A stretch of 64,000 nucleotides of DNA from Macrostomum lignano (GCA_002269645.1 NIVC01003777.1:13257-77256); one strand, 5' to 3'; counted from the first letter of the stretch, positions 1,050 to 63,942 are shown. Numbers and translations: made by a program. The notes: generated from the sequence alone by a model not told the origin.

Positions 1050-4197
<3,148 letters not shown>

Positions 4198-33878: not shown

Positions 33879-36800
33879 ATGACAACCCAGCCTCTTTGTA
33901 GCCTCATCTTACCGGCTGCAGCGCTGCTGTCGCTGGCGATGCCGTCCGCCTTAGCGGAGCTGACGCCATCACTTGAGCAGGCGCTGATAACGCGACTTGG
34001 GCTGCTGGGCCAGTCGGCCGGGGACGGAAGCTACTCACCGGCTGTCCGGCCGAAGCCGGACAATGGCTCGGCCAACACCGTCATAGTGCAGGCAATTATG
34101 TCCGCCTTGGCCGCTGTGGTGAGGAGCTGGGCTTGGGATCGGAATTTAAACAGCAAATATTTTAGTGTCCGAAACTCCAACACCGATCTCTAGTGTCCGA
34201 AACTCCAACACCGATCTCTAGTGTCCGAAACTCCAACACCGATATCTAGTGTCCGAAACTCCAACACCGATATCTAGTGTCCGAAACTCCAACACCGATA
34301 TCTAGTGTCCGAAACTCCAACACCGATCTCTAGTGTCCGAAACTCCAACACCGATCTCTAGTGTCCGAAACTCCAACACCGATCTCTAGTGTCCGAAACT
34401 CCAACACCGATATCTAGTGTCCGAAACTCCAACACCGATATCTAGTGTCCGAAACTCCAACACCGATATCTAGTGTCCGAAACTCCAACACCGATATCTA
34501 GTGTCCGAAACTCCAACACCGATATCTAGTGTCCGAAACTCCAACACCGATATCTAGTGTCCGAAACTCCAACACCGATATCTAGTGTCCGGAACTCCAA
34601 CACCGATATCTAGTGTCCGAAATTGCAACACTGATTTCAAGGGTCCAAAGCTAAAAAACTGATCCTTAGTGTCCGTAAACTCCTACACCGATTTCTGGTG
34701 TTCAATAGTCTAACACTGATCTGTAAGTCTAGTGTCCGAAAATTCACCACTGATTTCTAGTGTTTGGAGTCCAAATGTCTAACATTGGTGTCCGAATACT
34801 GACCATTTGCTTTGTATAATGTCTTGTAACTCTAGAAGCAGTCTGCTTGGGTTCAGCAAGTCGCAATTGTTTACCAGACAAATTTTGTTCGGCCTCAAAT
34901 TTAAGACTTCAAATTGGTTACTGGGGAGCCTCATTGTTTCAGGACTCAACAGTGCAGGAGTTGACCTTGCAGGTGTGGCTTACTCTGGTGAGCTAATGAA
35001 TATTCAATTCGCTGCTGCTGCTCCGTATGAAAATTTACTTGAAAATTCAAATCTCAAAACTACAGGTCTGGAACGACAATCGTCTGGCTTGGCGGGGACG
35101 ATTCAACTCCAGCTTTGACAGCATCGGAACCGTGTTTGCACCTGCGGAGCTCGTCTGGCAGCCGGACGTGTCCTTCTTAGACAGGTGGAAATTTTTTCTA
35201 GAGATGCATATCCAATTGTTATGTCTTCTTTTACACCGAAGAAAGACGGAAGATAGTGTTTGAGCGTTTGCGAGCTTATGCCACTCGAGAGCATAGCCGT
35301 TTCAGAAACTTAATATATTTCTTTGGCTCGCGAGCCGTCTCAAGCATTTAATACTGTACCGAGTATCTAGAGTTTCAACCCTAGACACTTTAGAAGCAGA
35401 AAGCAAACGAGGCCGAAGTCTATAAGAAGTCAGAAGTCACGTCACAACATCCCTCTTCCTTTCAATCTTGAGCCTGATACCTCTCCGGCGGTCTTCGCGT
35501 TCGCTGAGGGTATCTGCGATCCGCCATCGGTTGATCCTCAGCACTTGGAGGTTCTCTCACTGTCTCATTCGTTGCCTCGGCTCTGTCCCTGACATGGTCA
35601 CGGTGCACGACCAGATCTCGTCCTTGCTCGTCCCGCACTCGTCTCAACTGTTCGCCGACAGCTTCGCGCAGCACTCCTTCCCTCCACTCCTTGTTAAACG
35701 GATCCTGGACCCAGACTGGGCTGTAGGCTTGGTCAATCCGCTTGTCTTGAAAGGACCGACGGTGCAGCAGTGAGAGTCTCGTGTTGAACTCGCGCCCAAA
35801 CATTTCTCGGCACGGCGCGACTCCGTTGGCTCTTGGACAGACTCGCACCGCGTACAAAGCCTGTTGCATCCGAACCTCCGGATCTGGGTCATTCAGCTGC
35901 TTCAGCTTGGTCTTCAGCTTTTTCACTGCAGCCTCTGCTACGCCATTTGATGCGGGGAGACTTCAGGTGTAACACTCCCATCCGCTTCAGCCAGGCCTCC
36001 GTCTCATGCGCCACAAACTGTCGTCCGTTGTCAGTCACTAGTACATCTGGGATGCCAAAGTTGCAAAATGTTCTGCGGAGTACTCTGATGACCGACGTTG
36101 CATCGATTTCGCGCACCCATTCGGCAGCGATGAATCCCGTCTTGGCGTCTGAAACCACCAGAAAGTTGCTTCCATCCAGTTGTCCCAGGTCAGCGTGCAC
36201 TCGGCACCAAGCCTCCTTTGGTACTGGCCATGGTTTGAGCACCGATTTCTGGGATGGTCTCATGCGCTGGCACGTGTGGCAATCCGAAACGCACTTTTCT
36301 ATCTCTGTCTCCATTAGCGGCCACCAGACATACTGGCGGGCCCACGCCTTCATGGCTTGCATTCCGGGATGGGAACAGTGGAGAAATTGGATGACTTGCG
36401 CTCGGAACTTCACCGGGATGACGATCCGATGGTCCAGTAGCAGTAGATGGTCGCTGCAATTCAGTCTGCACTGTACTCTTCTGTATGAGTCCGGCACGTC
36501 CTCACCAGATCGCAACCTCTGTAGAACGTCTTGGATCTCCTTGTCCTCCTTGGACGCCTGCTCCATCTGATCCTTCGTGACTGGTCCATCTTCTGACAGG
36601 GCGATGTCCACCGCAGCAACTTCGTTAACCGCTTCAGTCGCCGTTTTGTCGCTCCAGTTATTTCCGTCAGTTGGTAGTCTCGACAACGCGTCGGCATGAG
36701 GAATTTCGTGCGTTCTTTTGCCTCTGACTAGGTACTGGTACGTAGCCAGTAACTCAGCCCAGCGCTGAACTCTCTTACTTGCTCTCTCGGGCAGGTCTTT

Positions 36801-39800
36801 GTGTGATGCGAATAAGAATTCTAGAGGCTTGTGATCGGTCACAATCACAAAACTCCGATAAGCTAGGAATCGATTTAGCTTCTTGACGCACCAGACCACT
36901 CCGAGGGCTTCTCGTTCTAGCTGGCTGTATCGCGACTCCGCAGGTGTGAGTTTCTTGGACACAAACGCTACAGGCCTTCCACTCTGCTCCAGCACTCCTC
37001 CAATGCCGTAGGGCGATGCATCTGTAGTCAGAGTTAGCTCCTTACTTGGATCGTACGGCGCTAGCACCTGCCTTGATGTAATGTCCTGCTTCAATTGCAT
37101 CACGGCCTTCGTGTGTTCTTGTTGCCATGTCCAGTTGACATCTTTCTTCAGCAAGTTATACAGAATGGCAGTCTTCGTGGCCACTTGCGGAATGAACGGC
37201 GCATAGAAATTTATCAGTCCCAGAAATGTTCTCAGCTCTTCCTGGTTTCTTGGATCTTCCATGCTTTGTATTGCCGTCACCTTATCCTCGTTCATGCAGC
37301 ATCCCTCCTTTGAGATCTTAAGGGCTAGAAACTCGACCTCTTCCTTGTCGAACTGGCACTTCTTAGCATTCAGTGTGATGTCATTCTCTTGCAGCCTTTT
37401 AAGTATTATTTCCGTCTTCTCGGCTAAATTTTCCCGGTTTTTTCCACAGACTAGAATGTCGTCAATGAACACCACCACTCCGAGGACATCCCGAAGCAAC
37501 TCGCATAGTGTGTTCTGAAACAATCCAGGAGCAGATGACAGTCCGTATGGTAATACCCTGTACCGAAAGTAACCAAAAGGTGTTGCGATAGTAGTGATAT
37601 CCCGTGAGTCCTCGCACAGCTCCAGGTTATGGTATGCATCCTTCAAATCTAGCACAGTGAAACGGCTGCATCCTGAGATGGCTCGTTGCACATCCGCCTT
37701 TGTTGGCATATCGATTGGCGGTAGCCGTAAAAACTGGTTGACCCGTCTATAGTCTCCACACAGCCTGATGTCTCCCGAGCTTTTGGGAACGACCACAATC
37801 GGACTAGCGAACACCGGCTGTTCTACTTTTTCAATTATCTTCCGCTTTTCCAGATCTTCTAATCTTTCCTTAACGGCTGGTACCAGCGAAAATGGGAGTG
37901 GTCGGGCCTTCGATACCACCGGTCTCGTGTTTTCTCGTACTTCCAACTTTACTTGAATTCGCTTATAAGCCAATGAAGCTTGACAACGGCGTTTGGTAAC
38001 TTCGATACCCAAACTACTAAACCAATTTCGGCCAATAACCGGCTTTGCGTTCATGTCCATGACTACCACAGGTAATGAGCACTCACTTTCATCTTCGGTC
38101 TGAACTCGAACATCTGCGGTACCACATACTGGTAGGTCTTGTCCTCCGTATGATGTTAGTCGACAATTTGGGTCTGTCCAATGCAGTCCTAGTTGTTCAG
38201 CCAAAATCTTAGAAATGCAGGTCACTGATGCACCAGAGTCCACCATCATAGCAACGTCCTTATCGTTCAGTTTTACATTGATCCAGACGCTTGATCTGTC
38301 CCGGTCATCGCATAGGCTAAAAAGCTCATTGTCCTTGGCTGGTTCATCCTCCTCCTCGATTCCTGCACACTCTCGCATTGACAACTTTCCTTTAATGGAG
38401 CCAGATGCCATCCTTCCATGTGAGCTAGCTGGCTTGTTAAGCTTACATGCAGCTTCAAATGGTTCATTTTCCCACATTTTCGACATTTTGCTCCAAACGC
38501 AGGGCATGCCTTTGGCGGGTGCCTCTTCATACAGAAATTGCAAGCCTTGCTGAATGTGCGTCCTTGAGCTTGGGCCCTGTTTTGTTGTCGTACTCTGCCC
38601 TTAGTCGCACTGACTGTTTCCACCTTTCCATTAGTGCTTAAGGCACTCTTGCTTACTTGCTCTTGCGCCGTGGCAGTCTCCACCGCCAGCTCCAGGGTCA
38701 GCGGGTCTTTGATAAGCAGCTCTTTCACCACCGACTCACTGCGCAGTCCTGCCACGAATCTGTCTCGCAAAGCTTCTTGTAGGAAATCTCCGAATTGACA
38801 TCGGTCTGCTTGAGCACGTAACCTGTTCTCAAAATCTGCCGCTGATTCGTATTCATCTTGCTTCAGTAAGTTAAACTTGTAGCGCTCAGCTACAACCAGT
38901 TTCTTCTGCGGCACGACATGCTTCTCAATTTCATCCTTCAATTCCTTGAAGGTCTTGTTCTCTGGCTTCGCCGGAGCGACCAGGTTCCGCAGCTTGTCGT
39001 AGGCAGTTTCCCCCATGAGGCTTATGAAGAAGTCGGTCTTGGGCGAAAACCCTTCCTCCTTCTCATCCTTCACGCCGGATCTCCTGCAGACGGCTTCAAA
39101 CCGCTCGATCCAGGCCTCGAATTTGTCCTCTGTCCAGGGAAGCTCCCGCAGGTTCTCTCGAGACAGCGACGCCATTGTCTATAAGAAGTCAGAAGTCACG
39201 TCACAACACCAATCATAGACCAGGAACTTCCAGGAAGTGAAGTGTACATGCCTAACGATAAATAAAGTTAGGGCCGCTGTGCACTCCTGTGTGAGTGTGT
39301 GACTGCGTACGTATCCGCGCGCTTGTATGCCTGCTCAGGGGAGTCGGTGGAATGGGCAGCAATGCCTCTCGCCGGTTGTGCGACAATGTCGCTTAAAGTG
39401 CGCCAGGGTGCACACAGCCCCTTGGCTTTAACTAAACCTAAGAAGACTAAAAGTACATTCACTATCTAAGCCATTTACAGAATAAGGGCTAAATTACAGT
39501 TACTGTCTATGCAGAAGTCTAGAAACTAAAGTACGTTCTCTGTCTCTCCAATCCTGCAAGAGTGATGATGAAATTAAAAGCTTAAAAATCGATGCACAGC
39601 CCCTGCTGAAGCCAGTCAAATAGAATAGTGAAATTTACGTGCCTACAAAATAAAAGTACTTTTGCACTCACTGAGGCCTGCAGCTTGAGCCTTCAGCGGG
39701 TATCGGGCGACCGCGTTCTGCTAAACCTGACCAGCGCAGGCGGCGTGGCGCGCAGCCAGCAGTTCATGGTCCGCTTCAAGTGCCGCTTTGACATGCGCAA

Positions 39801-42800
39801 TTTCCCATACGATGCGCAGCGTTGCGGCGTCAAGATCGGCTCGATTATGCAGAGCTCGGCCTCTGTGAGAGTGCGGATGATGCCGGCCAGCGAGGTGGAG
39901 TTTAGCGGAGCCACAGGCAGCCACGAGTTCTGCGTGCAGAGCGTCTTCACTGAGGAAGGAGCTGAAGGCGAATTTCCATTCGTTCGGCTGGTTGTCGTCT
40001 TCTCGGTGCGCTGCTTACTGGGTCGGGGGGAAGGGATCGGAAGGGAAGAGTTGTAGGGAAGGGGTCGGAGGGAAAGAGTTGGAGGGGAAGGGGTCAGAGG
40101 GGAAGGGATCGGAGGGGAAGAGTTGGAAGGGAAGGGATCGGAGGGGAAGGGATCGGAGGGGAAGGGATCGGAGGGGAAGGGATCGGAGGGGAAGGGATCG
40201 GAGGGGAAGGGATCGGAGGGGAAGGGATCGGAGGGGAAGGGATCGGAGGGGAAGGGATCGGAGGGGAAGGGATCGGAGGGGAAGGGATCGGAGGGGAAGG
40301 GATCGGAGGGGAAGGGATCGGAGGGGAAGGGATCGGAGGGGAAGGGATCGGAGGGAAGGGATCGGAGGGGAAGGGATCGGAGGGGAAGGGATCGGAGGGG
40401 AAGGGATCGGAGGGGAATGGATCGGAGGGGAAGGGGTTGGAGGGGAATAGGTCGGAAGGGCAGGGGTCGAAAGGAAAGGGTTCGGGGGGGGGGGAGGAAT
40501 CTGACAGAAGGGATCCGAGGGGAGTTTTCAAAGTGGAAGAGGTTAATGAAGCTGTAGAAAGGTGTAGAAAGCAAACAGACAGGGTGGCCTCCTAGGTTGT
40601 CACCTGAGACAAAGTAAATTTTGGATAATTTACTGTGGAACTCACTCGAAAATTAATAATTTGATTTCGTTCACCAAAGCGCCGATCAACATTCTACCTG
40701 GTGAACATCGTCATACCCAGCCTCCTGCTGCTCGCCATCTCAACCCTGGTATTCCGCCTGCCACCGGAATGCGGCGAGCGAATGTCCCTGAGCGTCACCA
40801 TCGTGCTGTCGATGTGCGTGTTCCTGCAGCTGGCTGGCAGCTACACCCCAACGCAGAGCGAAGCTGTGCCTCTGCTCAGTGAGTTAAATAAATTTCAGAA
40901 CTCCGTTTTTGGATCCTGATACAAAACTTTCGGTAGAATGTACAAAAGTGCAAGGATGCATACACACACACACACATCGAAAAAAGATACAACACTTATC
41001 TTTAAATATATGATTGCCAGTTTTATTGGTTCTTTGCTTTTACAACGCATTTTTGTAAAATTTATAACAGGCAAGTCATACGGAAGTATTGTAAGGATTA
41101 GCCTTTCATCCGAAGAAATGAAAAGGTCCAATCTCAGTAGTGTTATTTTTCTCGTACTTTCGCGTGAAGCCAGTATTAACAGTAGAACTACCAAGAGGGG
41201 GAAATTCCCCCCCCCCCTGACATTTTTTTGCTGCGCCGGAACGGAGCAACGCAGGCACACGAAATTCAAGAAAACGGGCTAATTTTTTGTTGCGCACCTT
41301 CTCAAACAAGAATCAAGTCGCCAGCCCTCCGGACCGTCGAGATATTCGACGATTATGCCAGAAGGTCGGATTTTTCCCATAAGCGCCAGTGTATTCAGTG
41401 CACCCCTGTGCGCCAGTCAGCACTGCGCCTCAGTGCAGCCTCGCCAAGCCTCCAAATTTCATCAGCACGTAGACCAAATGTGTCTGCATCAGCTCTGACT
41501 TCGTTGGTCACTAGCCTTCACCCAGGCGGAGCTTCTGGACCTTCAGCAGGTGGCACCAAGTGACTATGGACAGCCTGATGCAGATTTCTCTAGTTTCGCC
41601 GATCAAGCCTTGACAGTGAGCAAAAATCAACTGCTGGGCATCCTCAGCTAGTCTCTCAAACATTCCGTCATCACCCCGACACCGTCGGCACCTTCAACAG
41701 ATTACACCAGGCGATTATTGGCATCCTGTTGCAAATATTTTAGACTGTTCTGATCAATCTTCAATAATGGGCAAACCTCTACTGCTAGGTATCCTCAACT
41801 AGTTTTTCAAGCATCCGGTCGTCATTCAGCCGTCGTCGGCACCTTCAAGAAGACGAAACCGACTATAGACACCCAAAAGAGAATATTTTTATTGTTAACA
41901 ATTTTAGCAATTTATAAGATAGAAGACTAGATATCCAGTATATTATGAATTGATCTTCATTCCGAACAGAAAATTGGATAATTTCTAGTAATTTTTTCTT
42001 CGCGAAGATTCTGTTCAATTTACAGTTTAATTAGCAAATTACGTCATCAAGTTTACTTAATTATGTCCGGTGATGATAGACTGTTTGAGAGTATAGCTGA
42101 GAACGACCAGAAGTTAAAGTTTGCCTATTATTGATGTTGGTCAGCGACATCAAAGAAATTCGCAACAGCGTGTCCATTGTCACCTGTTTTCATCTGTTGA
42201 AGGAGCCGACGGCGTCGGGTGATGATAGAATGCTCGAGAGACTATCTGAGAATGTCCGTCGGTTGAGGCTTGCCCATTATTGAAGCTTGATAAGAAAAAT
42301 CTGACATATTTGCAACAGGATGTTCATAGTCATCTTGTGTCATCTGTTGAAGGTGCCGACGGCGTCGAGGTGATGACGGAATGCTTGACAGACCAGCTGA
42401 GGATGTCCAGCAGTTGATTTTGCCCACTGTCGAGGCTTGATCAGCGAAACTAGAGAAATTCGTATCAGGCTGTCCATAGTCACCTGGTGCCACCTGTTGA
42501 AAGTCCAGAAGCTCCGCCTGGGTGAAGGCTAGTGACCAACGAAGTCAGAGCTGATGCAGACACATGTGGTCTACGTGCTGATGAAATTTGGAGGCTTGGC
42601 AAGGCTGCACTGAGGCGCAGTGCTGACTGGCGCACAGGGGTGCACTGAATACACTGGCGCTTATGGGAAAAATCCGACCTTCTGGCATAATCGTCGAATA
42701 TCTCGACGGTCCGGAGGGCTGGCGACTTGATTCTTGTTTGAGAAGGTGCGCAACAAAAAGTTAGCCCGTTTTCTTGAATTTCGTGTGCCTGCGTTACTCC

Positions 42801-44140
42801 GTTCCGGCGCAGCAAAAAAATGTCAGGGGGGGGGGGGAATTCCCCCCTTCTCTTGGTAGTTCGACGGGCGGAAAAATGGCTTGGTATTCCTACTGTTAAA
42901 AGCGTTTCGAGCTACTTATAGTAGTCATCTTCTTAATCAAATTTCAGCCTATCACTGCAGCGCGGTGGCCATGCTGACCATGGGCAGCCTGCTCGGCAAT
43001 GTGTTCGTGCTCGACTGCCACTTCAAGCTGCAGCGGGGCGGCAGGCGGGTGGTCAGTCCGCTGGTCCGGCTGCTGTTTCTCAACCGCTGCATTACTGGGA
43101 ATTGCAAGCGAACGGCAGACGCGGTGAGTCACGCGACAATCTCGAAAGGCATCTGACAGAAGCTAAATTTGAGCCACAAGGAGACAGGGGCGCCAACCAA
43201 GAGACAGGGGCACCCACCAAGAGACAGGGCGCCCACCAAGAGACAGGGGCGGCCACCAAGAGACAGGGGCGGCCACCAAGACAGCAAATATTGTCGACCC
43301 TTAGGGTTAAATAAATTATTGTGCACGCCACTAAGCCTGCGAGTTGAATATAAATCTATAGAGGGGAGAACTCGGACTTATAAGAAGCTTTTGAAGAGTT
43401 AAGCAAGATAAATTGAGCTATTAAATGTGTATCTAAAAGTGAGATTCAAACTCTTTAGTAACTTATATGCTAGCTGGTTATAACCGCTAAGTTACGGACT
43501 CACCCGCATTCAACGTTTAGCCTTTTATATAGATAACTATATAGTAATTAGGTCAAGTGAATGATGGTTGGCGCCATCTATGGTGGTTGGTTGCATTGGG
43601 GGTTGTAGCCTAGTGGTCGATCCCACTGGAACAATTTGTTTCCTTGAGCAAGACACCTAACTCTGCATTGCTTCAGTTTATCCAGCTGTAAAATGGGTGT
43701 CAGCATTAGCTGGGGTAATTGAGGGTGTGTGTGACGACCATACGCAGCCTTCAGATGCGCCGCGCAATAGCTGCGGCTGAGCTGTCGATCTGTCCCGATT
43801 AGTGCAGGTGTAATCAATTATTATTATTGAACAGTTTCTTAGTTCCCTCTCGCTATTTCTCTGATAAAACGTCAAGATCAGCTCCTGGTGTAACATTGCA
43901 TCGTTACATTGTGCCGTCCCATTTCCACAGAGGGTACTACCAGCCAACAAGACTTCGGGCAGCTCTGACGCCGAGACGGAGGAGGCAGCCGGTCGAGAAG
44001 TCAATGAATGGCTGGTCGTGGTTGCTGCCGCTGACAGGTGTCTGTTCGCCCTGTTCCTGTCCGCCACTCTCACCATAGCCGTCGCAGTTTGCTGCGTTGA
44101 GACGAGCTCTGTGCGAGCCTGCCAGTACAGCGCCTACTGA
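33879..44140 (+). CDS. Divergent nAChR-like Cys-loop channel subunit A, 7 exons: 33879-34118, 34943-34987, 35066-35184, 39684-40005, 40680-40878, 42948-43123, 43931-44140 (436 aa, frame intact)
   Basis: Signal peptide; YSPAVRP; 45-nt exon DSTVQELTLQVWLTL; WNDNRLAW...VWQPDV; Cys-loop CRFDMRNFPYDAQRC; M1-M2 FYLVNIVIP...LPPECGERMSLSVTIVLSMCVFL; M4 EWLVVVAAADRCLF. Exon phases sum to an open frame of 1311 nt. Confidence 0.9.
34175..34760. repeat. 28-bp minisatellite (TAGTGTCCGAAACTCCAACACCGATATC) in intron 1 of channel A
   Basis: About 16 near-perfect units decaying toward the 3' end. Confidence 0.95.
35217..39208 (-). mobile_element. Ty3/gypsy LTR retrotransposon (gag-PR-RT-RH-IN) in intron 3 of channel A, antisense to the host; defective as assembled
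   Basis: TSD CCAAT (35212-35216, 39209-39213). 3' LTR 35449-35217 (TG...CA) after a PPT at 35450-35464. 5' LTR reduced to 39208-39176. PBS-like TGGCGTCGCTG overlaps the gag ATG at 39175. Motifs: PR MVDSGAS, RT FIDD, RH TDASPYG, IN HCSH..CHTC/D-D-E. Frameshifts at about 38458 and 35955. Confidence 0.95.
40030..40445. repeat. 15-bp purine-rich minisatellite (GGGAAGGGATCGGAG) in intron 4 of channel A
   Basis: Direct reading; source of the PSDPF and EGKGS ORFs. Confidence 0.96.
41180..42895. mobile_element. Foldback DNA element with ~700-bp inverted arms and TTAA flanks (Sola3-like) in intron 5 of channel A
   Basis: TTAA|CAGTAG at 41176-41185 and CTACTG|TTAA at 42890-42899. About 41185-41870 is the reverse complement of about 42170-42862; twin ORFs 41228-41563 (+) and 42480-42815 (-). 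Confidence 0.82.
43170..43282. repeat. ~20-bp repeat (CCACCAAGAGACAGGGGCGC), related array at 45530-45742
   Basis: Direct reading. Confidence 0.85.
43598..43829 (+). mobile_element. SINE copy with deletion between A and B boxes, ending in an (ATT)n tail
   Basis: GGGGTTGTAGCCTAGTGG joined to TCGATCCCACTGG; CORE-like body; tail GTGCAGGTGTAATCAATTATTATTATT. Confidence 0.85.
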
Positions 44141-44373
44141 GACTGAGCACGAAATGCTGAGCTTAAAGCTTCTAAACCGCAGATTAGTGATGCAAGCAAT
44201 GCGTGTTGCTACCCACGTACTGAACAAAAATGAAGAAGCATATACACTTGTTAGAGGAAAGTTACAATAAAAAGCCCCAAGAATCAGGCTCTGCTTCTAA
44301 AAGAGCCGCTTTCATTCGTCAAATTGAACAATCATTAGTTAAAACTCGGTTTTCCATTTCTATTTCGATGCAG

Positions 44374-44870
44374 CTGTCAGTGCAAGCTGTTCCTGTTCGA
44401 TGCGTGCAGTCACCGTGTGCAGTCTGTGCCGAGCTGCACTCATCAGGTGACTGTGTATGTGAGGTCTCTGCCCGGCGTACCTCCGGGTCACCTGTGTCCG
44501 TCCGGATACGAGCACACGAGACACGGCACATCGTACAAGGTGGTCACGTCGGTGACTCTCACCTGGAACAACGCCAACCTGACCTGCAGTGCGGATCCCG
44601 GACTGACCAAGTTCTCTGATGCGATCGACCTTGATGAGGCTCTGCACCTGAGGTCGCTGAAGCAGCTGATGGGCAGCTCGTTCGATTTTTCCTTGGGATT
44701 TTAGAAATTTGAATGCTTACTCTGACTGGTTCTGGGCCGCCTGCGACCGCGTGGCACTCTGGAGAGCCGAACGGTGCCGCGTCATTGGAGTGCACAAATC
44801 TTTGGTGCAGCTTTGAAAAATTGAAGGCTTGACTACGATTCCTACATCTGCGAGTGCCAGTCCGTGTTTT
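44374..44870 (+). pseudogene. 5'-truncated, deleted copy of the EPN C-type lectin gene (53794-54546)
   Basis: Near-identical to about 54012-54330, then deletions and frameshifts; retains the terminal TACATCTGCGAGTGCCAGTCCGTGTT; lacks the signal peptide. Confidence 0.88.
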
Positions 44871-45529
44871 CAGACAACTTTCTTAAACTAAATTATTACC
44901 TAAGCAAATATAATCGAAGCTATGGCCATGAACTAGTTTTGTAGTATGGGTTCTAATGTTAATTACTGTTACATTTAAGAACTTATTACTGACAGATTCT
45001 AAAATGATTTTTTAGACATCTTGAAAGAAAGTTCACAAAGTTATTTTTATCTCAGAATTCTGTACCCTAAGTAAGCTGAGGTCCTTAAGCATTTGAGCAA
45101 GTTGAAATGCGAGTAGTTGCTTCGTTCACACTTCAAGTAAGTGATTCTGTGCAGAATAGACCAACCTGCTCAGAAGTCATTAGGAATTCCGAAGAATCCT
45201 CTCCCAATGCTTCACCTGTTGAAGGCAGTCTTAGCCCTTTATTTCACCTGTCACTGACGTCTCACGCTTTTTTCAGCGTAAGATGAGCACTTTCGCCTTG
45301 GCATTGAGTGCAGCCTCAGCCAACAACACTCAAACTTGAGCAGCTCAATAGAGTGGCAGGCCCAGTAAATTTCTGACAAAGCTTGTTTTCACAGGAAATT
45401 TCTCTTTTTACGAGCTATATTTGAAACTTTCCCTGATTCACAGATCATATTTATACTGCATCCCACAGGAGCTCAACTTTTGCAACCTCTTGGGTGTCGT
45501 ATCCAACGGCCTAAGTAAGAGAAGGGGGT

Positions 45530-46230: not shown

Positions 46231-47004
46231 ATGCTGCTCTTCGCACTGCTGCAGCTGCTGTGGGTGTCGGCAGTTCTGTCCGATTCCTGCAGCTCTGACG
46301 GAGTGAAATTCTCTCCAATCACCGGTGTGGACTGCGTGAGCCCCGAGTTCACTCGAACTGTGTCGGGCCTGTGCTCTCCACTCGAATGCAGCATTCAGTG
46401 CGCTCAAATGCCCAAGTGTCAGGCTTTCAGACTGCTGACAGCTGGAGCCTGTCAGTGCAAGCTGTTCCTGTTCGATGCGTGCAGTCACCGTGTGCAGTCT
46501 GTGCCGAGCTGCACTCATCAGGTGACTGTGTATGTGAGGTCTCTGCCCGGCGTACCTCCGGGTCGCCTGTGTCCGACCGGATACGAGCATACCAAATACG
46601 GCACCTCGTACAAGATTACATCGTCTCCAAACAAGAATTGGCAAACTGCCAACCAAATCTGCAGTACGCAACCGGGACTTTCGAAGTTCGCTGACGCAAT
46701 CGATTTCGAGGAAGCCGCGTACCTGAGGTTGCTGGTGCGGGCAGACTACAACCCCGACTGCTTCCTGGGCGGCAAGCTGACAACTGACATATCCACTGCC
46801 ACAACCAAGTCCAACTGGGTCTGGACCGCCTGCAACCTGACCATCGATGCGAGTGTCTGGCAGGGCGGGCAGCCCGACGGAGTCAATGAATATAATAGCA
46901 GCGGCTGCGCCAACCTGTGCTCTTATTTTGGCACCGGAGGCATCGACGACCATGGATGCGACATCTCAACCTGGTACATCTGCGAGTGCCAGTCCGTGTT
47001 CTGA
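46231..47004 (+). CDS. Secreted PAN/apple + C-type lectin protein (QPD motif), intronless, 257 aa
   Basis: Signal peptide; CSPLECSIQCAQMPKCQAF (PAN-like); CPTGY...NWQTANQIC...FLGG...WVW...WQGGQPDG...C...IDDHGC...YICEC (CTL fold). Confidence 0.88.
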   Translation: MLLFALLQLLWVSAVLSDSCSSDGVKFSPITGVDCVSPEFTRTVSGLCSPLECSIQCAQMPKCQAFRLLTAGACQCKLFLFDACSHRVQSVPSCTHQVTVYVRSLPGVPPGRLCPTGYEHTKYGTSYKITSSPNKNWQTANQICSTQPGLSKFADAIDFEEAAYLRLLVRADYNPDCFLGGKLTTDISTATTKSNWVWTACNLTIDASVWQGGQPDGVNEYNSSGCANLCSYFGTGGIDDHGCDISTWYICECQSVF

Positions 47005-47285: not shown

Positions 47286-48369
47286 CAGGGCCGTAGCCGG
47301 GGTGGGCGCCAAGGGAGGCCGAAGGGATGCCAAAACTCTGGCGTTCCCTTGCCAGTTGGTGCTGGCGCCCCTGGTGCTGGCGCCCCTGGTGCTGGCGCCC
47401 CTGGTGCTGGCGCCCCTGGTGCTGGCGCCCCTGGTGCTGGCGCCCCTGGTGCTGGCGCCCCTGGTGCTGGCGCCCCTGGTGCTGGCGCCCCTGGTGCTGG
47501 CGCCCCTGGTGCTGGCGCCCCTGGTGCTGGCGCCCCTGGTGCTGGCGCCCCTGGTGCTGGCGCCCCTGGTGCTGGCGCCCCTGGTGCTGGCGCCCCTGGT
47601 GCTGGCGCCCCTGGTGCTGGCGCCCCTGGTGCTAAAGCCCCTGGTGCTAAAGCCCCTGGTGCTGGCGCCCCTGGTGCTAAAGCCCCTGGTGCTGGCGCCC
47701 CTGGTGCTGGCGCCCCTGGTGCTGGCGCCCCTGGTGCTGGCGCCCCTGGTGCTGGCGCCCCTGGTGCTGGCGCCCCTGGTGCTGGCGCCCCTGGTGCTGG
47801 CGCCCCTGGTGCTGGCGCCCCTGGTGCTGGCGCCCCTGGTGCTGGCGCCCCTGGTGCTGGCGCCCCTGGTGCTGGCGCCCCTGGTGCTGGCGCCCCTGGT
47901 GCTGGCGCCCCTGGTGCTGGCGCCCCTGGTGCTGGCGCCCCTGGTGCTGGCGCCCCTGGTGCTGGCGCCCCTGGTGCTGGCGCCCCTGGTGCTGGCGCCC
48001 CTGGTGCTGGCGCCCCTGGTGCTGGCGCCCCTGGTGCTGGCGCCCCTGGTGCTGGCGCCCCTGGTGCTGGCGCCCCTGGTGCTGGCGCCCCTGGTGCTGG
48101 CGCCCCTGGTGCTGGCGCCCCTGGTGCTGGCGCCCCTGGTGCTGGCGCCCCTGGTGCTGGCGCCCCTGGTGCTGGCGCCCCTGGTGCTGGCGCCCCTGGT
48201 GCTGGCGCCCCTGGTGCTGGCGCCCCTGGTGCTAAAGCCCCTGGAGCTAAAGCCCCTGGTGCTAAAGCCCCTGGTGCTAAAGCCCCTGGAGCTAAAGCCC
48301 CTGGTGCTAAAGCCGCCACGATGACGCCCCCACGATGTGGCCCCAATGAAAGACCTTGGCTACGCCCTG
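47286..48369. mobile_element. hAT-like MITE shell carrying an expanded 15-bp minisatellite (GGTGCTGGCGCCCCT, about 64 units, 47357-48315)
   Basis: Termini CAGGGCCGTAGCC / GGCTACGCCCTG; no TSD found. Confidence 0.7.
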
Positions 48370-48971: not shown

Positions 48972-49441
<470 letters not shown>

Positions 49442-53793: not shown

Positions 53794-54546
53794 ATGCAGC
53801 TTTGTGTTTTTCTACTGCTGCTGTGGGTCCCTGCGGTGCTGTCCGAGTCCTGCAGCTCCGCCAGGCTGAAATTCCACCAAACCACCGGACTGGACTGCGT
53901 GAGCTCCGACTTCACCAGCATCGTGTCCGGTCTGTGCACTCCGCTCGAATGCAGCCTCGTCTGCGCTAGGAAGGACAAGTGTCAGGCCTTCTCAGTGCTG
54001 ACAGCTGGAGCCTGTCAGTGCAAGCTGTTCCTGTTCGATGCGTGCAGTCACCGTGTGCAGTCTGTGCCGAGCTGCACTCACCAGGTGACTGTGTATGTGA
54101 GGTCTCTGCCCGGCGTACCTCCGGGTCGCCTGTGTCCGTCCGGATACGAGCACACGAGATACGGCACATCGTACAAGGTGGTCACGTCGGTGACACTCAC
54201 CTGGAACAACGCCAACCTGACCTGCAGTGCGGATCCCGGACTGACCAAGTTCTCTGATGCGATCGACCTTGATGAGGCTCTGCACCTGAGGTCGCTGAAG
54301 CAGCTGATGGGCAGCTCGTCTGATTTTTTCCTTGGCGGATCTGGAACTTCGAATGCGCACTCTGACTGGTTCTGGGCCGCCTGCAACCTGCCCGTGAACG
54401 CCAGCGTATGGCACTCTGGAGAGCCGAACGGTCCTGCGTCATTGGAGTGCACAAATCTTTGGCATGGCCATTCAACTGGAGGCGTTGACGATGACTCCTG
54501 CAGCAGTGCTCGCAAGTACATCTGCGAGTGCCAGTCCGTGTTCTGA
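53794..54546 (+). CDS. Secreted PAN/apple + C-type lectin protein (EPN motif), intronless, 250 aa
   Basis: Paralog of 46231-47004; WHSGEPNG...ECTNLW...VDDDSC...YICEC. Confidence 0.88.
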   Translation: MQLCVFLLLLWVPAVLSESCSSARLKFHQTTGLDCVSSDFTSIVSGLCTPLECSLVCARKDKCQAFSVLTAGACQCKLFLFDACSHRVQSVPSCTHQVTVYVRSLPGVPPGRLCPSGYEHTRYGTSYKVVTSVTLTWNNANLTCSADPGLTKFSDAIDLDEALHLRSLKQLMGSSSDFFLGGSGTSNAHSDWFWAACNLPVNASVWHSGEPNGPASLECTNLWHGHSTGGVDDDSCSSARKYICECQSVF

Positions 54547-58170: not shown

Positions 58171-58495
58171 AGACATTTGTGCGACGAATTAACTATAGCT
58201 AAAAGTGTGCTTTTGATTGTTATATGTTAAGTTTAAAATATACGCGTTAACTTAAAAAATTATACCACTTCTAAAAATTCCAAACAATGACCGGTCATTG
58301 TATGAATGTCATTGCCTTGAACTAAATTACCATAGACATTTTGAACATTGCTATTGTTTAACTGTGACTTGATAAAAGCTGTCGAAAGAATCACATATGC
58401 TGGTCTAGGGAGCGGAACAGAGAACCATCGACTTGACGCAAGCGTTAACGCGTAATTTTTAAGTTGCAACTCTAGATTCCTCTTTCCGCAACTAA

Positions 58496-60923
58496 TTAGT
58501 CCTCATTGATGCACTTCTGGCCATCTGTAACAAGTCCAATAGCGGCCAGTGCTATCACCAAAGACACGGTAATGCCAAAATAGAACGCAAACAGGCAGGT
58601 GTCAACGCCTGAAATTATGGTGCTCCATTGACAGCGCAGAGCGTTCTCGCAGGCGGTCTCAGACTCGTTGTCGGGCGACAAGCTCTGCCGGACTGAACCG
58701 TCGGCTTCCGGCTGCCGACGGCTCCGACGAGCGACGAACGAGTGAAAGAACAGCGTCCGGAGCAGACGTCCCGGGGGAGCGGCGCGGCAACACCGGCTGT
58801 GGCAGCTGAGAACGAAGGCGTTGCCCAAGACGACGGTCATTGTCATCACCACCGCCAGAGTGCAGTAGCAGGCTGGACCAGGAAATAGAAGAGAGTGGGC
58901 GAGTGCGTATGAGAAAAATTTGAAATCGAGTGGGTTAACGTCGAGAGGAAGTGGTACATACAAAGCCGTGGGTACAAGTAAAGGATGCCGGAGCTCGTGC
59001 TACATTGATAAGAAGAATAAACAACAAACTAGCTCGTACGAGGTCCGGCAAGTAAGTATGCAGTCATTCATTCACAAGGTCGTCTGGTATGCAGATAGAC
59101 TCGCATTAAAAAACAACTCAACAAAGAACGTGATAACCCAAGCCACTCTAAGTTTATAGCTAAATTTCTTTTGCGAATTTTAACTTGAGTAACTTTGCTG
59201 TTGTTACTCAAAAATCATTACAAATCATTTTCATCAACATAAACGTAAATCATAAACGAATAGATTTATATCGTTTTTTGTCGAGTGACACAACTCCTGT
59301 GCAATTAACTGCAGCAGATATCTGGATTTATGTCCACAGAACTCACTTAGCAGAGGGACGGATTCACTCTGCGTGGGCGTGTGCTCATTCACCATCTGCA
59401 GGAACACGCACATGGACAGCACGATGGTGATGCTGAATGACATCCGCTCGCCGCAGTCCGGTGGCAGTCGGAAGGTGACGGTGGAGATGGCGAGCAGCAG
59501 GAGGCTGGGCAGGATTAGGTTTATCACGTAGAAAATGGGCCGTCTCTGAAAAAAAATATTGGAACGTGATGTTGCCTAAAAATTTTGCAAGCCAATTAAA
59601 TTTTTTAGATACAGACGCAATATTCTTACCTTGAAAGTGATGGCAAACTGCAGAATATCAAAGTAGTAGTCCACAGTCTTCCTGATTGTCGCTCCTGTAA
59701 TGCAAAACTCGTCGTTGCGGGCCAGGTACTTCGTGATGGAGTCGTTCTCTAGGTAGGCTCCGATGTGCAAAGCCAGCACCTGCTTCGAATGAATGGCTGA
59801 CGAGATGGGCACTACGCAGCGCTGCTTGTCATAGGGAAACTCGAACATGCTCATTGGGCACTTGCTGGTAATCACGTACTGGGAGGTGTACATTACCGAT
59901 CCCTGAGAGCTAACGTGAGCCATTGCGTTGCTAAATGACACCCGCTGTATGAACAAGCTGCAAGTTTTGGTTGGACAGTGTAACGTTGCAAGCATCCCGA
60001 GGATTGCTTTTTTATTGCTCTTGAGTTTAGTAACGTCTATTAGAGCTTCCATTAACCATGCAGTTCAGACACACGATTTGCTTACTCTTAAAATGCTTCA
60101 GTAATGCCGCATCGTCAACTCGTTGAATCCGCAAGAAAAATGTTGTACAAAGTCCCAGTAATATTCTATAGAGGGCTTCTACTTACCAGTTAGAGGAATA
60201 TACAAAAGCAAAGTGGGTATCCACATTGCAGACTGTACACTCGTATAAACAACCAATGGACTCATTGATTTTTTTTTCATTTATATTAATTAATACACAA
60301 ACGAGTATCTACCTAGTAGAACAGAGCAGCTAGTGAGAATCAAAATGGTAACGAACACATCCCGGTCTCACAGATCGATGAAAGACACATCCGGTAGCCA
60401 CAGCAGCCTGGCCGGAAAGTAGACCGCCGTCTCGCTGTCCAAACTGTCGTTGAAGCGACCGTGCCAGGCAAGTCGGCGGTCTGTCCAGGACTGGAAAAAA
60501 GTTGATGACTTTTTACCTGTTGCTGATCCTGAAAAATCTGCAGAACATTAGAGAGTGATTCGCGGTCTCTAAATATGTCTTACCAGTGTAAGCCACAGGA
60601 GTAGACTGACCTCCTGAGATGCGGAATTCTGAACAGCAGAAATAATGAATAATTAATGAGTAAATGCGAGGAACATTACGTACATAAATCAAGTTCATTA
60701 GTTGATATCGTCCAAAACTCACGACAGCCACCAGACTATTAAAGTTGGTGTGCACCCGGACCAGATTAGCCGTCCCATTATCCGGTGGCGGTCTCACATC
60801 CGGGTTGTAGCCGTTGGCAGACTTTAACCGCAGTGCCGCGGCAATTCGTTCATCAGAGGAGACATCTGGCACCGTGGCGGTCGCGGTGGCAGCGCAGATC
60901 AAAATTAGGCCTAGTAGCAGCAT
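58496..60923 (-). CDS. Divergent nAChR-like Cys-loop channel subunit B, 6 exons: 60923-60723, 60628-60584, 60490-60372, 59957-59630, 59545-59347, 58872-58496 (422 aa, frame intact)
   Basis: YNPDVRP; NSASQEVSLLLWLTL; WTDRRLAW...LWLPDV; CPMSMFEFPYDKQRC; LPPDCGERMSFSITIVLSMCVFL; QWSTIISGVDTCLF. Total 1269 nt. Confidence 0.9.
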
Positions 60924-61881: not shown

Positions 61882-63942
61882 TCAATAATTACTCGACATG
61901 TCGCAGTTGGTCCGCGAGTTCGTGATCTCCAGGATTAACAGCGTCAGCGTCAGCGCCAGCTTCAGGCTGAAGAAGACAGCGAAGAAGCAGCGGTCGGCGG
62001 CGAACAGCAATGGGGATCCATTCTTTGCGAGGGTCGTTGTCCCGGCAACGCGGAGTCTGCTCCGCCTGCGGTTGACTTGGCGTAGCTGGTCGCCTGGGCG
62101 AGACGACGTTCAACTCGCTCTCGTTGGATTCCTGCGAATGGGGTGCCAATTTTAACCGCAAATGGACACAGAAACTTATAGATCTGCCAAATCTGACACA
62201 GGCTTGGCAGTCTTAACAAAATCCAACCCAGCTCTCCGTCTCTCCCTTACTCTCACCGCGTTCCGGACAGCGGCGGTGGCGCTGTGGTTTCGAACCTGGT
62301 AACACTTTCTGCACTGCAGCCGGGCACATGCGAACATATTGAGAAACAGAAGTCGCATTAGCCGGCTTGGGACTTTGGTATGCTCATTCTCGGACGAATG
62401 CTCAAAGTAGCAGCTCAGTACGAAAATGTTGGCAATCAAGTGAAGCATTGTCAGAAACACCGCGAGGCTGAAGTACCAGGCTGGAAATTGGAGGAGGACA
62501 AATAGGTCATGAGTCTCAATATTCCAGCCTGTAGTTCACTCTCAGTGTTGGATTGAAATTAGCTCGAAACTCACTGAGCAAAGGCACAGATTCCCCCTGT
62601 GGAGGCATATAGTTGCTGCTGAGCTGCAGGAACACGCACATAGACAGCACGATGGTGATGCTCAATGATATTCGCTCTCCGCACTCGGGCGGCAGGCAGA
62701 AGACCAGGGTAGAGATGTAGAGCAGCACGAGACTCGGAATGATCAGGTTCATGAAGTAGAATAGTGCTTTACGCTGAAAGTGTCAAAGGTGAAACTGGCT
62801 CTGCGAAAAAACGGGACTATGACAGGGGAGTCCACAAAAAGTGTGTGATCCCCGTTCCAACTCAACCAAATTCTGAGAAGTTTCTACCTTTATTTCCACC
62901 TGCAGCTGAACAATATCGTAGTTCCACTTATCGATAGAATTTGAAACGCTGACGTTCATCACGCAGAAGTCGTGGTTCTTGAAGAGGGAAGGCGTGATTC
63001 CAGGTGGTCCAGGCTCGATGCGCAGTGGTTTTTCTCGTGTGCACCACCGAAGATACGCGCTGGTGGCAGATCTGCGTGTCGTGTAGGGAAAGTTGGCCAT
63101 ATTCATTTCGCACTTGGACCAGGAGAGCAGCTCAACAAGGAACAGCACCGAGCCGTCGCTGCTTAAAGTCAGGAAAACTTTATCGCTGGAGGTGCGCCGG
63201 AAGTGCAGGCTGAAAGGTTACATGAGTACCATTAGATGAATGTCACCGTTAGTCCATTATCTTGAAGTTTCTCTAAGAGAACAATCGGGGTGCCATTGGG
63301 AGACTTAGCAAAGCGGTATGGCTGCAATTGCATAGGAATGATCAAGCCCAAGGAAAAAGTGTCGCACTTACAGGTTGCCGAAGGCCACATCCGGTTGCCA
63401 GAGCAGACTGGCTGGCACAAAAATGGAGCTCACGTTATCGAAGGTAGAGTTGAATTTTCCTTTCCAGGCCAGGCGGCTGTCCCGCCAGTACTGTAGTGAA
63501 AGTGCAAATTAAATGAATCGATAGCTCACTGCTGCACCGTGAGTCTGATGTAATAAACTCGATGCGTCAATGTCTGCGGCAGCAATGAACTTACGAGTCA
63601 CGTACCAAATTGAACCAGGTTTGCAGCACGATCTCCTGCGTTGCCGAGTCCTTCATTTTTTGGTTAGAAATGATTTAATGCTCACGATCTGCTCCAAAAT
63701 TCAACATTGTTCTCACAAAAAATCGACAAAGCCGAAGTACTCACCACATGAGCCAGGCTTTTCAAGTTGAACAAGACGGTCACAAGTTGGCTGAGCCGTT
63801 GTCGGTGGCGGCGGACGTCTTTGTTGTAGTCGGAATTTAAATTCAGCGCCGTTTTCAGGGCCTCATCCGGGGACACTGAGGCAGCCGCCGCGGCACGGCA
63901 GAGCAAGAAAACTATGAAGCTTGATAGCGGAGACTGCGGCAT
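61882..63942 (-). CDS. Divergent nAChR-like Cys-loop channel subunit C, 7 exons: 63942-63745, 63650-63606, 63490-63372, 63209-62888, 62773-62575, 62480-62296, 62131-61882; carries frameshifts (pseudogene or sequence errors)
   Basis: DSATQEIVLQTWFNL; YWRDSRLAW...LWQPDV; CEMNMANFPY/DTQIC in two frames; LPPECGERISLSITIVLSMCVFL; EWIPIAV/AADRCFF in two frames. Confidence 0.82.

What the first reader, a model, noticed from the sequence alone, without database searches (positions are those of the whole stretch)
33879..63942. Cluster of three nAChR-derived cation channels that have dismantled the acetylcholine site: candidate chemosensory receptor family
Seen in all three paralogs: nAChR architecture, a 45-nt exon, loop-D Trp retained and a cation-type GER ring. 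The loop-A Tyr is replaced (SFLDS, SFIDL, AFGNL), the loop-B Trp is replaced (GSIMQ, SSAIH, SSVVH), and loop C is short with no YxCC. The extracellular domains diverge strongly while M2 (TIVLSMCVFLQ) is identical. Known: these aromatics form the ACh cage, and cephalopod chemotactile receptors arose from nAChRs by similar loss in tandem clusters. Inference: an independent, intron-retaining radiation of ligand-diversified sensory channels in this lineage.
Basis: partly seen in the sequence, partly recalled or inferred. Interest (0 to 1): 0.78.

Follow-up and report, generated by a model that had tools for sequence, protein, structure and literature searches.

The report
Flatworm cluster of divergent nicotinic-like channels
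The window holds three neighbouring genes from the flatworm Macrostomum lignano (two intact, one damaged) for nicotinic-receptor-like cation channel subunits that have lost the usual acetylcholine-binding residues; such lineage-specific orphan families are already known in related animals, and nothing here shows a sensory role.

Summary
Window 33879-63942 holds three spliced Cys-loop receptor genes with one shared exon plan, including a 45-nt exon.

- **Intact genes.** g1 (+ strand, 7 exons) and g2 (- strand, 6 exons) keep the Cys-loop, the loop-D Trp, a PPE/DCGER cation filter, a 9' Leu and an identical M2. Both lack the loop-A Tyr, the loop-B Trp and the loop-C Cys pair.
- **Damaged gene.** g3 as assembled is frameshifted at three places. 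The quoted "SSVVH" and the second Cys-loop cysteine are out of frame, and M4 is lost. It is probably decaying, or locally mis-assembled.
- **Organism and family.** The organism is Macrostomum lignano: UniProt entries from that species are 97-99% identical to g1 and g2. At least 12 paralogs form a Macrostomum-only clade, and a fourth gene lies just beyond the window. The clade is about equally distant from nAChR-like and 5-HT3-like channels.
- **Where the paralogs differ.** Variation concentrates in loops B, C, E and F, while the pore is fixed.

My best reading is orphan, non-alpha, cation-selective subunits with a remodelled binding pocket. A role as accessory subunits in cholinergic receptors remains a live rival. 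A chemosensory role has no evidence either way. This is a new member of a known kind, of modest interest.

The parts
33879..44140 (+). g1: intact 7-exon pLGIC subunit gene, 436 aa. Exons: 33879-34118, 34943-34987, 35066-35184, 39684-40005, 40680-40878, 42948-43123, 43931-44140.
   Evidence: All introns are GT-AG. Pfam LBD 1.1e-27 and TM 3.3e-19. M. lignano UniProt A0A1I8GVX6 (P0007) is 97.3% identical and uses the same exons except the 45-nt one.
34943..34987 (+). g1 45-nt exon, DSTVQELTLQVWLTL, carrying the loop-D Trp.
   Evidence: Flanked by tttcag and gtgagc. It aligns to the DEKNQ..W exon of nAChR-like proteins.
39838..39852 (+). g1 loop-B position, GSIMQ (Trp replaced by Ile).
40797..40829 (+). 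g1 M2 pore helix core, TIVLSMCVFLQ, preceded by PPECGER (-1' Glu).
58496..60923 (-). g2: intact 6-exon pLGIC subunit gene, 422 aa. Exons: 60923-60723, 60628-60584, 60490-60372, 59957-59630, 59545-59347, 58872-58496. The last intron of g1 and g3 is absent.
   Evidence: the exon-1 donor was corrected to GTGAGT. Pfam LBD 2e-28 and TM 3.6e-20. 98.7% identical to the g2 part of UniProt A0A1I8GX25 (P0006).
60584..60628 (-). g2 45-nt exon, NSASQEVSLLLWLTL (loop-D Trp).
   Evidence: Flanked by ctgttcag and gtaaga.
59789..59803 (-). g2 loop-B position, SSAIH (Trp replaced by Ala).
   Evidence: (aligned to beta2 RSWTY).
59396..59428 (-). g2 M2 core, TIVLSMCVFLQ.
61889..63942 (-). g3: 7-exon paralog. The ORF is open through exon 6, but three stretches are frameshifted relative to the family. 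Exons: 63942-63745, 63650-63606, 63490-63372, 63209-62888, 62773-62575, 62480-62257, 62131-61889.
   Evidence: Its counterpart in P0006 differs at 27 of 421 residues, against 5 of 382 for g2.
63775..63819 (-). g3 exon-1 lesion. Three 1-nt deletions make RPPPDNGSANL read as RRHRQRLSQL.
   Evidence: Three-frame view. P0006 and P0001 read RPPPDNGSANL here.
63025..63088 (-). g3 exon-4 lesion. A +2 (AC) after FPY and a +1 in an A-run bracket the stretch. The second Cys-loop Cys and the loop-B string DTQICHQRVSSVVH lie out of frame between them.
   Evidence: DNA alignment of the three exon 4 copies. Conceptual frame restoration. P0001 reads FPYDTQSCHQRVSSVVH.
61993..62011 (-). g3 exon-7 lesion. An uncompensated +1 falls between KEWIPIAV and AADRCFF, so M4 is not translated.
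   Evidence: P0006 reads KEWIPIVAAADRCFFAVFF.
62624..62656 (-). g3 M2 core, TIVLSMCVFLQ.

Best explanation
This is part of a tandem cluster of at least four genes from the free-living flatworm Macrostomum lignano. The genes belong to a Macrostomum-only clade of divergent, non-alpha, cation-selective Cys-loop (pentameric ligand-gated) channel subunits.

**Shown**
- g1 and g2 encode complete subunits: signal peptide, beta-sandwich domain with a C-x13-C Cys-loop and FPYD, M1-M4, acidic residues at -4' and -1' before M2, and 9' Leu.
- The principal-face acetylcholine contacts (loop-A Tyr, loop-B Trp, loop-C Tyr-x-Cys-Cys) are gone.
- Among paralogs the pocket loops on both faces (B, C, E, F) are the least conserved regions, while M1-M2 is nearly invariant.

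**Inferred**
- The subunits assemble into cation channels, alone or with each other.
- Their remodelled orthosteric pocket does not bind acetylcholine in the canonical way and has been free to change ligand specificity. They are therefore orphan receptors. The ligand and the expressing tissue are unknown.
- g3 in this copy is under relaxed constraint and is probably a decaying gene.
For: - **Gene models and domains:**
- **Species and second copy of the locus:** P0006 and P0007 are 97-99% identical M. lignano entries.
- **Family restricted to M. lignano:** every hit clearly above the 150-175-bit plateau is from that species, apart from fused multi-copy predictions whose scores are summed. The NJ clade has 200/200 (core) and 176/200 (extended) bootstrap support.
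- **Closest outsiders:** they are heterogeneous (alpha-9/10-like, alpha-7-like, beta-2/4-like, tardigrade, digenean) and all about equally far.
- **Lost aromatic residues and short loop C:**. Loop-B Trp is present in 120 of 161 outsiders but in none of the core family.
- **Cation filter and pore:**
- **Region-wise identity among paralogs:** loop B 0.18, loop F 0.18, loop E 0.24, loop C 0.27, against Cys-loop 0.58, M1 0.68 and M2 0.84.
- **Complete pLGIC fold:** the AF2 model of paralog P0001 has pLDDT above 90 over most of the ECD and TMD and matches nAChR and 5-HT3 chains at TM about 0.8.
- **Transcript support:** a transcript-based NCBI model of an extended-family member (PAA50078, P0153) includes a 15-residue segment at the 45-nt exon position.
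- **g3 lesions and faster divergence:**
Against: - There is no expression, ligand or assembly evidence of any kind.
- Non-alpha subunits that lack the loop-B Trp exist in ordinary cholinergic receptors.
- The loop-D Trp, an acetylcholine contact on the complementary face, is retained in g1-g3 and P0001.
- Two family members (P0001, P0004) keep the loop-A Tyr.
- dN/dS is uninformative because synonymous sites in the ECD are saturated.
- The near-identity of M2 extends to synonymous sites, 35 of 36 nt. It may partly reflect gene conversion or codon bias rather than protein-level selection alone.
- Restriction to Macrostomum rests on the databases available; few other macrostomid genomes are in them.
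Confidence: 0.5

Rival explanations
1. They are ordinary accessory (non-alpha) subunits. They contribute only the complementary or a structural face to acetylcholine-gated heteromers formed with canonical alpha subunits encoded elsewhere. Loss of the principal-face aromatic residues then has no consequence for the transmitter used.
For: - The best PDB sequence matches are beta2, muscle beta1 and beta4 subunits.
- The loop-D Trp is retained.
- There is no loop-C Cys pair.
- Vertebrate muscle beta1, delta and gamma likewise lack the loop-B Trp (established knowledge).
- The pore is canonical and cation-type.
Against: - The complementary-face loops E and F are as variable among paralogs as loops B and C (0.24 and 0.18 identity). 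That is not expected if a shared acetylcholine-binding face were maintained.
- The family is lineage-specific, tandemly amplified and on a long branch. It does not group with amphioxus beta-2/4-like or any other conserved class.
- 120 of 161 nAChR-like outsiders, including non-alpha ones such as P0080, keep the loop-B Trp.
Confidence: 0.3
2. One reading: the family is a set of chemosensory receptors expressed in sensory cells and gated by environmental molecules, in parallel with cephalopod chemotactile receptors.
For: - It shares sequence-level signatures with published chemotactile receptors: loss of acetylcholine-binding residues and tandem, lineage-specific amplification (PMC10338036, citing van Giesen et al. 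2020).
- The pocket loops are hypervariable while the pore is fixed.
Against: - No expression data were available for any member.
- The literature searches found no work linking M. lignano pLGICs to chemosensation.
- The known family is small, about a dozen paralogs.
- The same signatures are seen in mollusc and annelid expansions whose members are linked to development, immunity and stress rather than chemosensation (PMC6896357).
Confidence: 0.12
3. The cluster, or at least g3, is non-functional DNA: decaying duplicates whose open frames persist by chance. Alternatively, the g3 lesions are local long-read assembly errors and the real gene is intact.
For: - g3 has six indel events in 1.35 kb of coding sequence and g1 and g2 have none.
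- g3 differs from its counterpart copy about five times more than g2 does.
- The other copy (P0006) also has an anomalous loop-B stretch and changes within M2 (SLRFTIVLS).
- For the assembly-error reading: most of the indels lie in homopolymers or short repeats, and P0006 reads through the exon 1 and exon 7 sites.
Against: - g1 and g2 have complete frames, canonical splice sites and a conserved pore, and are 97-99% identical to a second copy.
- In g3 the exon 1 and exon 4 indels each sum to a multiple of three.
- The two g3 copies restore the frame after the shared +1 in different ways. That hints at selection for a readable frame.
Confidence: 0.08

Closest known systems
Lineage-specific 'nAChR-like' expansions of lophotrochozoans (Jiao et al. 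2019, PMC6896357) and the orphan annelid receptor Alpo4 (PMC10338036)
   Same: - Cys-loop cation-channel architecture.
- Tandem duplication and strongly divergent ligand-binding domains.
- Many members lack the full set of acetylcholine-binding residues or the loop-C Cys pair.
- The ligand is unknown.
   Different: - Here the host is a flatworm, which neither study sampled (one search found no flatworm terms in PMC6896357).
- The genes keep 5-6 introns, whereas the mollusc expansion is largely intronless and retroposed.
- Alpo4 keeps the loop-B Trp and the aromatic cage. This family has lost the Trp.
Cephalopod chemotactile receptors (CRs; van Giesen et al. 2020, as summarised in PMC10338036)
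   Same: - nAChR-like subunits that do not carry the acetylcholine-binding signature.
- Lineage-specific, clustered paralogs.
   Different: - The taxon differs, and the Macrostomum clade has no non-Macrostomum member in my tree, so this is an independent origin.
- These genes contain introns.
- No sensory expression or hydrophobic-ligand gating is known for them.
- CR sequences themselves could not be placed in my tree.
Non-alpha nAChR subunits (neuronal beta2/beta4, muscle beta1/delta/gamma)
   Same: - Best sequence matches in the PDB.
- No loop-C Cys pair.
- Loop-D Trp present.
- GE(K/R) cation filter and 9' Leu.
- 45-nt exon at the same position as in vertebrate nAChR genes (established knowledge).
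   Different: - Only about 25% identity, with no orthology to any subunit class.
- Neuronal beta subunits keep the loop-A Tyr and loop-B Trp.
- The conserved 'PPAI' beta6 motif is absent.
- Loops E and F are hypervariable among paralogs.
5-HT3 receptor subunits
   Same: - Nearly as similar in sequence (117 against 135 bits; 23.1% against 24.5% identity).
- Equally similar in fold.
- Loop A without the nAChR Tyr.
- No PP in beta6.
   Different: - 5-HT3A keeps the loop-B Trp (W183) used for the cation-pi contact.
- The family did not join the 5-HT3-like sequences in the NJ tree.

Membership tests
Cys-loop / pentameric ligand-gated ion channel superfamily | Neur_chan_LBD plus Neur_chan_memb domains, with four transmembrane helices | tested here: met
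   Both Pfam domains are above threshold in g1, g2 and g3. The AF2 model of paralog P0001 shows a beta-sandwich plus M1-M4. g3 as assembled lacks M4.
Cys-loop / pentameric ligand-gated ion channel superfamily | Cys-loop: two cysteines 13 residues apart enclosing F/YPxD | tested here: met
   g1 has CRFDMRNFPYDAQRC and g2 has CPMSMFEFPYDKQRC. In g3 the second Cys is out of frame in this assembly.
Cation-selective branch (nAChR / 5-HT3 type) | Acidic residue at -1' (GEK/GER) before M2, and 9' Leu gate | tested here: met
   PPE/DCGER followed by (M/I)S(L/F)S(V/I)TIVLSMCVFLQ in all three genes.
Nicotinic acetylcholine receptor subunits (as acetylcholine-binding subunits) | Principal-face aromatic box: loop-A Tyr, loop-B Trp, loop-C Tyr residues | tested here: not met
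   The loop A position is L, I or G. The loop B position is I, A or V. Loop C is shortened. P0001 and P0004 keep only the loop-A Tyr.
Nicotinic acetylcholine receptor subunits (alpha type) | Vicinal Cys-Cys at the tip of loop C | tested here: not met
   Absent in all 13 family sequences. Present in 50 of 161 outsiders.
Nicotinic acetylcholine receptor subunits | Complementary-face loop-D Trp | tested here: met
   VWLTL, LWLTL and TWFNL in the 45-nt exons. It is Tyr or Phe in the more distant members P0153 and P0043.
Nicotinic acetylcholine receptor subunits | Phylogenetic grouping inside nAChRs rather than with 5-HT3 or other cationic pLGICs | tested here: inconclusive
   beta2 scores 135 bits against 117 for 5-HT3A. 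Identity is 24.5% against 23.1%. The only tree was an NJ tree of the 150 best database representatives. No ZAC or vertebrate reference set and no maximum-likelihood tree were available.
Nicotinic acetylcholine receptor subunits | Gating by acetylcholine, alone or in heteromers | not testable with these tools
   Needs electrophysiology.
Cephalopod chemotactile receptors | Membership of the cephalopod CR clade | tested here: inconclusive
   All family members are from M. lignano and form their own clade. CR sequences could not be retrieved, so they were not placed in the tree. They were not among the 60 best PDB sequence hits.
Cephalopod chemotactile receptors | Intronless (retroposed) genes | tested here: not met
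   6-7 exons with GT-AG introns.
Cephalopod chemotactile receptors | Expression in peripheral sensory cells and gating by poorly soluble environmental molecules | not testable with these tools
   No expression or functional data are available. The literature searches found nothing.

The most novel reading that the evidence does not exclude
A macrostomid-specific family of cation channels derived from nicotinic or 5-HT3-type receptors has been re-tuned to non-cholinergic ligands, possibly environmental ones. It would be an independent, intron-retaining parallel to the cephalopod chemotactile receptors, in an animal where transgenesis and RNAi make it testable. A sub-variant: the two copies of g3 restore their reading frame differently after a shared +1 insertion. 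That would mean binding-loop sequence is being rewritten by compensated frameshifts under selection for a readable frame.
Probability: 0.15. Interest if true: 0.7.

Novelty: new member of a known kind. Interest (0 to 1): 0.33.

Why it matters
If g1 and g2 prove to be channels gated by something other than acetylcholine, flatworms would join molluscs, annelids and nematodes as lineages that recycled the nicotinic scaffold for new ligands. Macrostomum lignano, a transgenic and regenerating model, would offer a tractable system in which to deorphanise one. As it stands, the finding mainly adds an uncharacterised flatworm family to a known pattern. It also flags mis-fused UniProt gene models (A0A1I8GX25, A0A1I8GVX6) and a damaged paralog.

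Tried and rejected
- **Word-index protein search.** The search with g2, and again with a six-sequence alignment, returned only the same four M. lignano proteins. It missed even the 98.7%-identical P0006, so I drew no conclusion about absent transcript-based models.
- **Genomic context of homologs.** The look-up of encoding contigs had no record for a window lectin ORF, P0001 or P0003. I could not compare other copies of the locus at DNA level.
- **dN/dS.** Synonymous sites in the ECD are saturated (pS 0.66-0.72), so the ratios are not interpretable.
- **Structure search.** nAChR and 5-HT3 chains match equally well (TM about 0.8), so it does not discriminate between them.
- **Biopython NJ bootstrap.** It timed out and was replaced by a numpy implementation.
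- **LTR search.** No repeat pair was found around the intron-3 retroelement.
- **Schistosome 'Cys-less' LGIC clade (PMC9874803).** Considered and rejected as a relative, because this family keeps both Cys-loop cysteines.
- **Reference sequences from memory.** I considered typing human nAChR and 5-HT3 sequences from memory as tree references and decided against it.


Full report
**What is in the sequence**

The exception, SFLDS, is real only across the intron-3 splice of g1. I read the open segments in all frames and placed GT-AG boundaries. This gave three genes with one shared exon plan.
- **g1** lies on the + strand and has 7 exons: 33879-34118, 34943-34987, 35066-35184, 39684-40005, 40680-40878, 42948-43123, 43931-44140. 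It encodes 436 aa.
- **g2** lies on the - strand and has 6 exons: 60923-60723, 60628-60584, 60490-60372, 59957-59630, 59545-59347, 58872-58496. It encodes 422 aa.
- **g3** lies on the - strand and has 7 exons: 63942-63745, 63650-63606, 63490-63372, 63209-62888, 62773-62575, 62480-62257, 62131-61889.

Exon 2 is 45 nt in each gene, exon 3 is 119 nt, exon 4 is 322/328/322 nt and exon 5 is 199 nt. All three products pass both Pfam thresholds for the neurotransmitter-gated channel ligand-binding and transmembrane domains. A tblastn of these proteins and their homologs finds no further copy in the first 33 kb of the window.

**The features claimed**

Alignment to human beta2 and to 161 nAChR-like database proteins confirms most of the claims for g1 and g2.
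- The Cys-loop is canonical (C-x13-C with FPYD).
- The loop-D Trp sits in the 45-nt exon.
- The loop-A Tyr position is Leu in g1 and Ile in g2.
- The loop-B Trp position is Ile in g1 and Ala in g2.
- Loop C is 5-6 residues shorter than in alpha-type subunits and has no Cys pair.
- The M1-M2 linker reads PPE/DCGER, with acidic residues at -4' and -1'.
- M2 carries 9' Leu, and its core TIVLSMCVFLQ is identical in all three genes.

Pairwise identity is 41-43% in the extracellular domain and 63-66% in M1-M3.

**g3 is damaged**

The three exon 4 copies aligned at DNA level show two extra bases in g3 right after FPY. A +1 in an A-run (63037-63025) then returns to the original frame.

Exon 1 has three single-base deletions within 40 nt (63819-63775). 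They turn the family motif RPPPDNGSANL into RRHRQRLSQL. Exon 7 has an uncompensated +1 between KEWIPIAV and AADRCFF (62011-61993), so M4 is not translated.

The M. lignano paralog P0001 reads FPYDTQSCHQRVSSVVH and ...AADRCFFAFFF in single frames. That fixes which frame is ancestral.

**Organism and second copy of the locus**

An exhaustive profile search of 1.84 billion representatives returned two fused gene predictions from Macrostomum lignano.
- **P0006 (UniProt A0A1I8GX25)** strings together a fragment of a fourth paralog, then g3, then g2, then antisense lectin sequence.
- **P0007 (A0A1I8GVX6)** is g1 fused to the lectin ORF at 46231-47004.

These entries are 98.7% identical to g2 and 97.3% identical to g1. 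The window is therefore M. lignano, and the entries come from another copy or assembly of the same locus. They also show that the cluster continues beyond the right edge of the window.

In that copy, g3 reads through the exon 1 and exon 7 sites. Its exon 4 is also abnormal (CHQR|WCTREKPL). This is equivalent to keeping the +1 in the A-run but losing the 10 nt that correspond to window 63056-63047. g3 differs from its counterpart at 27 of 421 residues, against 5 of 382 for g2.

I read this as relaxed constraint on g3. Local assembly error remains possible, because most of the indels sit in homopolymers or short repeats.

**The family**

Every hit that clearly exceeds the 150-175-bit plateau of ordinary nAChR-like proteins is from M. 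lignano: P0001-P0007, P0009/P0153 and P0045. P0043, also from M. lignano, scores on the plateau (172.7 bits) and is assigned by tree and motifs. The remaining high scorers are fused multi-copy predictions whose domain scores add up. Counting separate copies gives at least 12 paralogs. Several are visibly tandem, because the gene predictors fused them.

I extracted 174 domain copies and aligned them to one HMM. In an NJ tree the ten core sequences form a clade in 200 of 200 bootstraps, and the thirteen including P0153, P0009 and P0043 in 176 of 200.

The nearest outsiders are all about equally distant (corrected distance 1.73-1.8, against 1.11 within the family). They carry heterogeneous automatic names: alpha-9/10-like from chiton, brachiopod and nemertean, alpha-7-like from a hemichordate, beta-2/4-like from amphioxus, plus tardigrade, annelid and digenean proteins.

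The family is 24.5% identical to nAChR-like sequences and 23.1% to 5-HT3-like sequences in the same set. In the PDB, beta2 scores 135 bits and 5-HT3A 117 bits. An AlphaFold model of P0001 is confident over the ECD and TMD, and it matches nAChR and 5-HT3 chains equally well. So the family belongs to the cationic nAChR/5-HT3 branch, with nAChR slightly favoured and no orthology to any subunit class.

**How it probably works**

*Shown.* The channel machinery is intact in g1 and g2. The principal-face acetylcholine contacts are missing. Among seven core paralogs, identity by region is as follows.

| Region | Identity among core paralogs |
|---|---|
| Loop B | 0.18 |
| Loop F | 0.18 |
| Loop E | 0.24 |
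| Loop C | 0.27 |
| 45-nt exon / loop D | 0.56 |
| Cys-loop | 0.58 |
| M1 | 0.68 |
| M1-M2 linker and M2 | 0.84 |

For comparison, loop B is 0.24 among 40 random outsiders spanning phyla. The Trp itself is present in 120 of 161 outsiders and in none of the core family.

*Inferred.* These are orphan cation-channel subunits whose pocket has been free to change on both faces. That fits altered ligand specificity better than a conserved complementary face serving acetylcholine.

The main rival is an accessory, non-alpha role in cholinergic heteromers. Muscle beta1, delta and gamma also lack the loop-B Trp (established knowledge), and the loop-D Trp is retained here.

Nothing bears on a sensory role. 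No expression data were reachable, and literature searches found no study of this family. One relative (Mlig024351) is merely listed among 'nAChR-like' M. lignano channels in a supplementary table (PMC6881066).

**Comparison with what is known**

Massive, tandem, sequence-diverse nAChR-like expansions, with many members lacking acetylcholine-binding residues, are documented in molluscs and annelids (PMC6896357). The annelid orphan Alpo4 and the cephalopod chemotactile receptors are discussed as examples of non-cholinergic nAChR-like channels (PMC10338036).

The present family differs in three ways. It is from a flatworm. It retains its introns. Unlike Alpo4, it has lost the loop-B Trp. It is an uncharacterised new member of a known kind, not a new kind.

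**Caveats**
- The tree is distance-based and uses only the best 150 database representatives.
- CR, ZAC and curated vertebrate references were not available.
- The M2 identity extends to synonymous sites, 35 of 36 nt, while extracellular synonymous sites are saturated. Gene conversion or codon bias may therefore contribute to the 'identical pore'.

Noticed in passing
window 35462-39175 (- strand), inside intron 3 of g1: Ty3/Gypsy-type retroelement with an open gag ORF (38273-39175) and an 884-aa protease/RT/RNase H/integrase ORF (35889-38543), lying antisense to g1. No flanking LTR pair was detected.
   Followed up: partly
window 41197-41625 and 42418-42846 (intron 5 of g1): A 429-nt inverted repeat at 97% identity, with further nested arms. 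It looks like a foldback-type transposable element.
   Followed up: no
window 44224-44950, 46231-47004, 53794-54546 (+ strand): Three related C-type-lectin-like ORFs lie between g1 and g2. The first is broken and the third passes Pfam Lectin_C. UniProt A0A1I8GVX6 fuses g1 with the second one, and A0A1I8GX25 fuses up to four genes plus antisense lectin sequence. Both public gene models are wrong.
   Followed up: partly
window 40680-40878, 59347-59545, 62575-62773 (exon 5 of g1, g2, g3): The M2 codons are 35 of 36 nt identical among the three paralogs. Synonymous divergence in M1-M3 (pS 0.44-0.49) is well below that in the extracellular domain (0.66-0.72). This suggests gene conversion or strong codon bias on this exon.
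   Followed up: partly
window 63025-63088 compared with P0006: The two known copies of g3 share the +1 insertion in the A-run but restore the frame differently. The window copy has a +2 'AC' upstream. The other copy lacks 10 nt (window 63056-63047). Either the frame was rescued independently, or this is an artefact of gene prediction in the older assembly.
   Followed up: partly
beta9 strand of all family members (g2 'NDEFCITG', about 59700; g1 'SHEFCVQS', about 39930): A family-wide conserved cysteine ('EFC' or 'EYC') replaces the Trp of the nAChR 'GEW' motif just before loop C. Its partner, if it has one, is unknown.
   Followed up: no
beyond window 64000 (known only from P0006 residues 1-165): A fourth paralog (M1-M4 fragment '...LAISSLVFRLPPECGERMSLSVTIVLSMCVFLQLTDNY...') lies upstream of g3 on the same strand.
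   Followed up: partly
window 34150-34650, 39990-40560, 47330-48330, 48950-49450: Long simple or tandem repeats: a 28-nt unit in intron 1 of g1, a G/A-rich hexamer-type array in intron 4 of g1, a GC-rich (GAPGA-coding) array of about 1 kb, and a tetranucleotide-type array of about 0.5 kb.
   Followed up: no
window 2316-2780, 6438-6929, 25584-28694 (- strand): Unrelated genes upstream of the cluster: an exon of a Rho-family GTPase, an exon of a mitochondrial carrier, and a 1036-aa open frame with a teneurin-like EGF domain.
   Followed up: no
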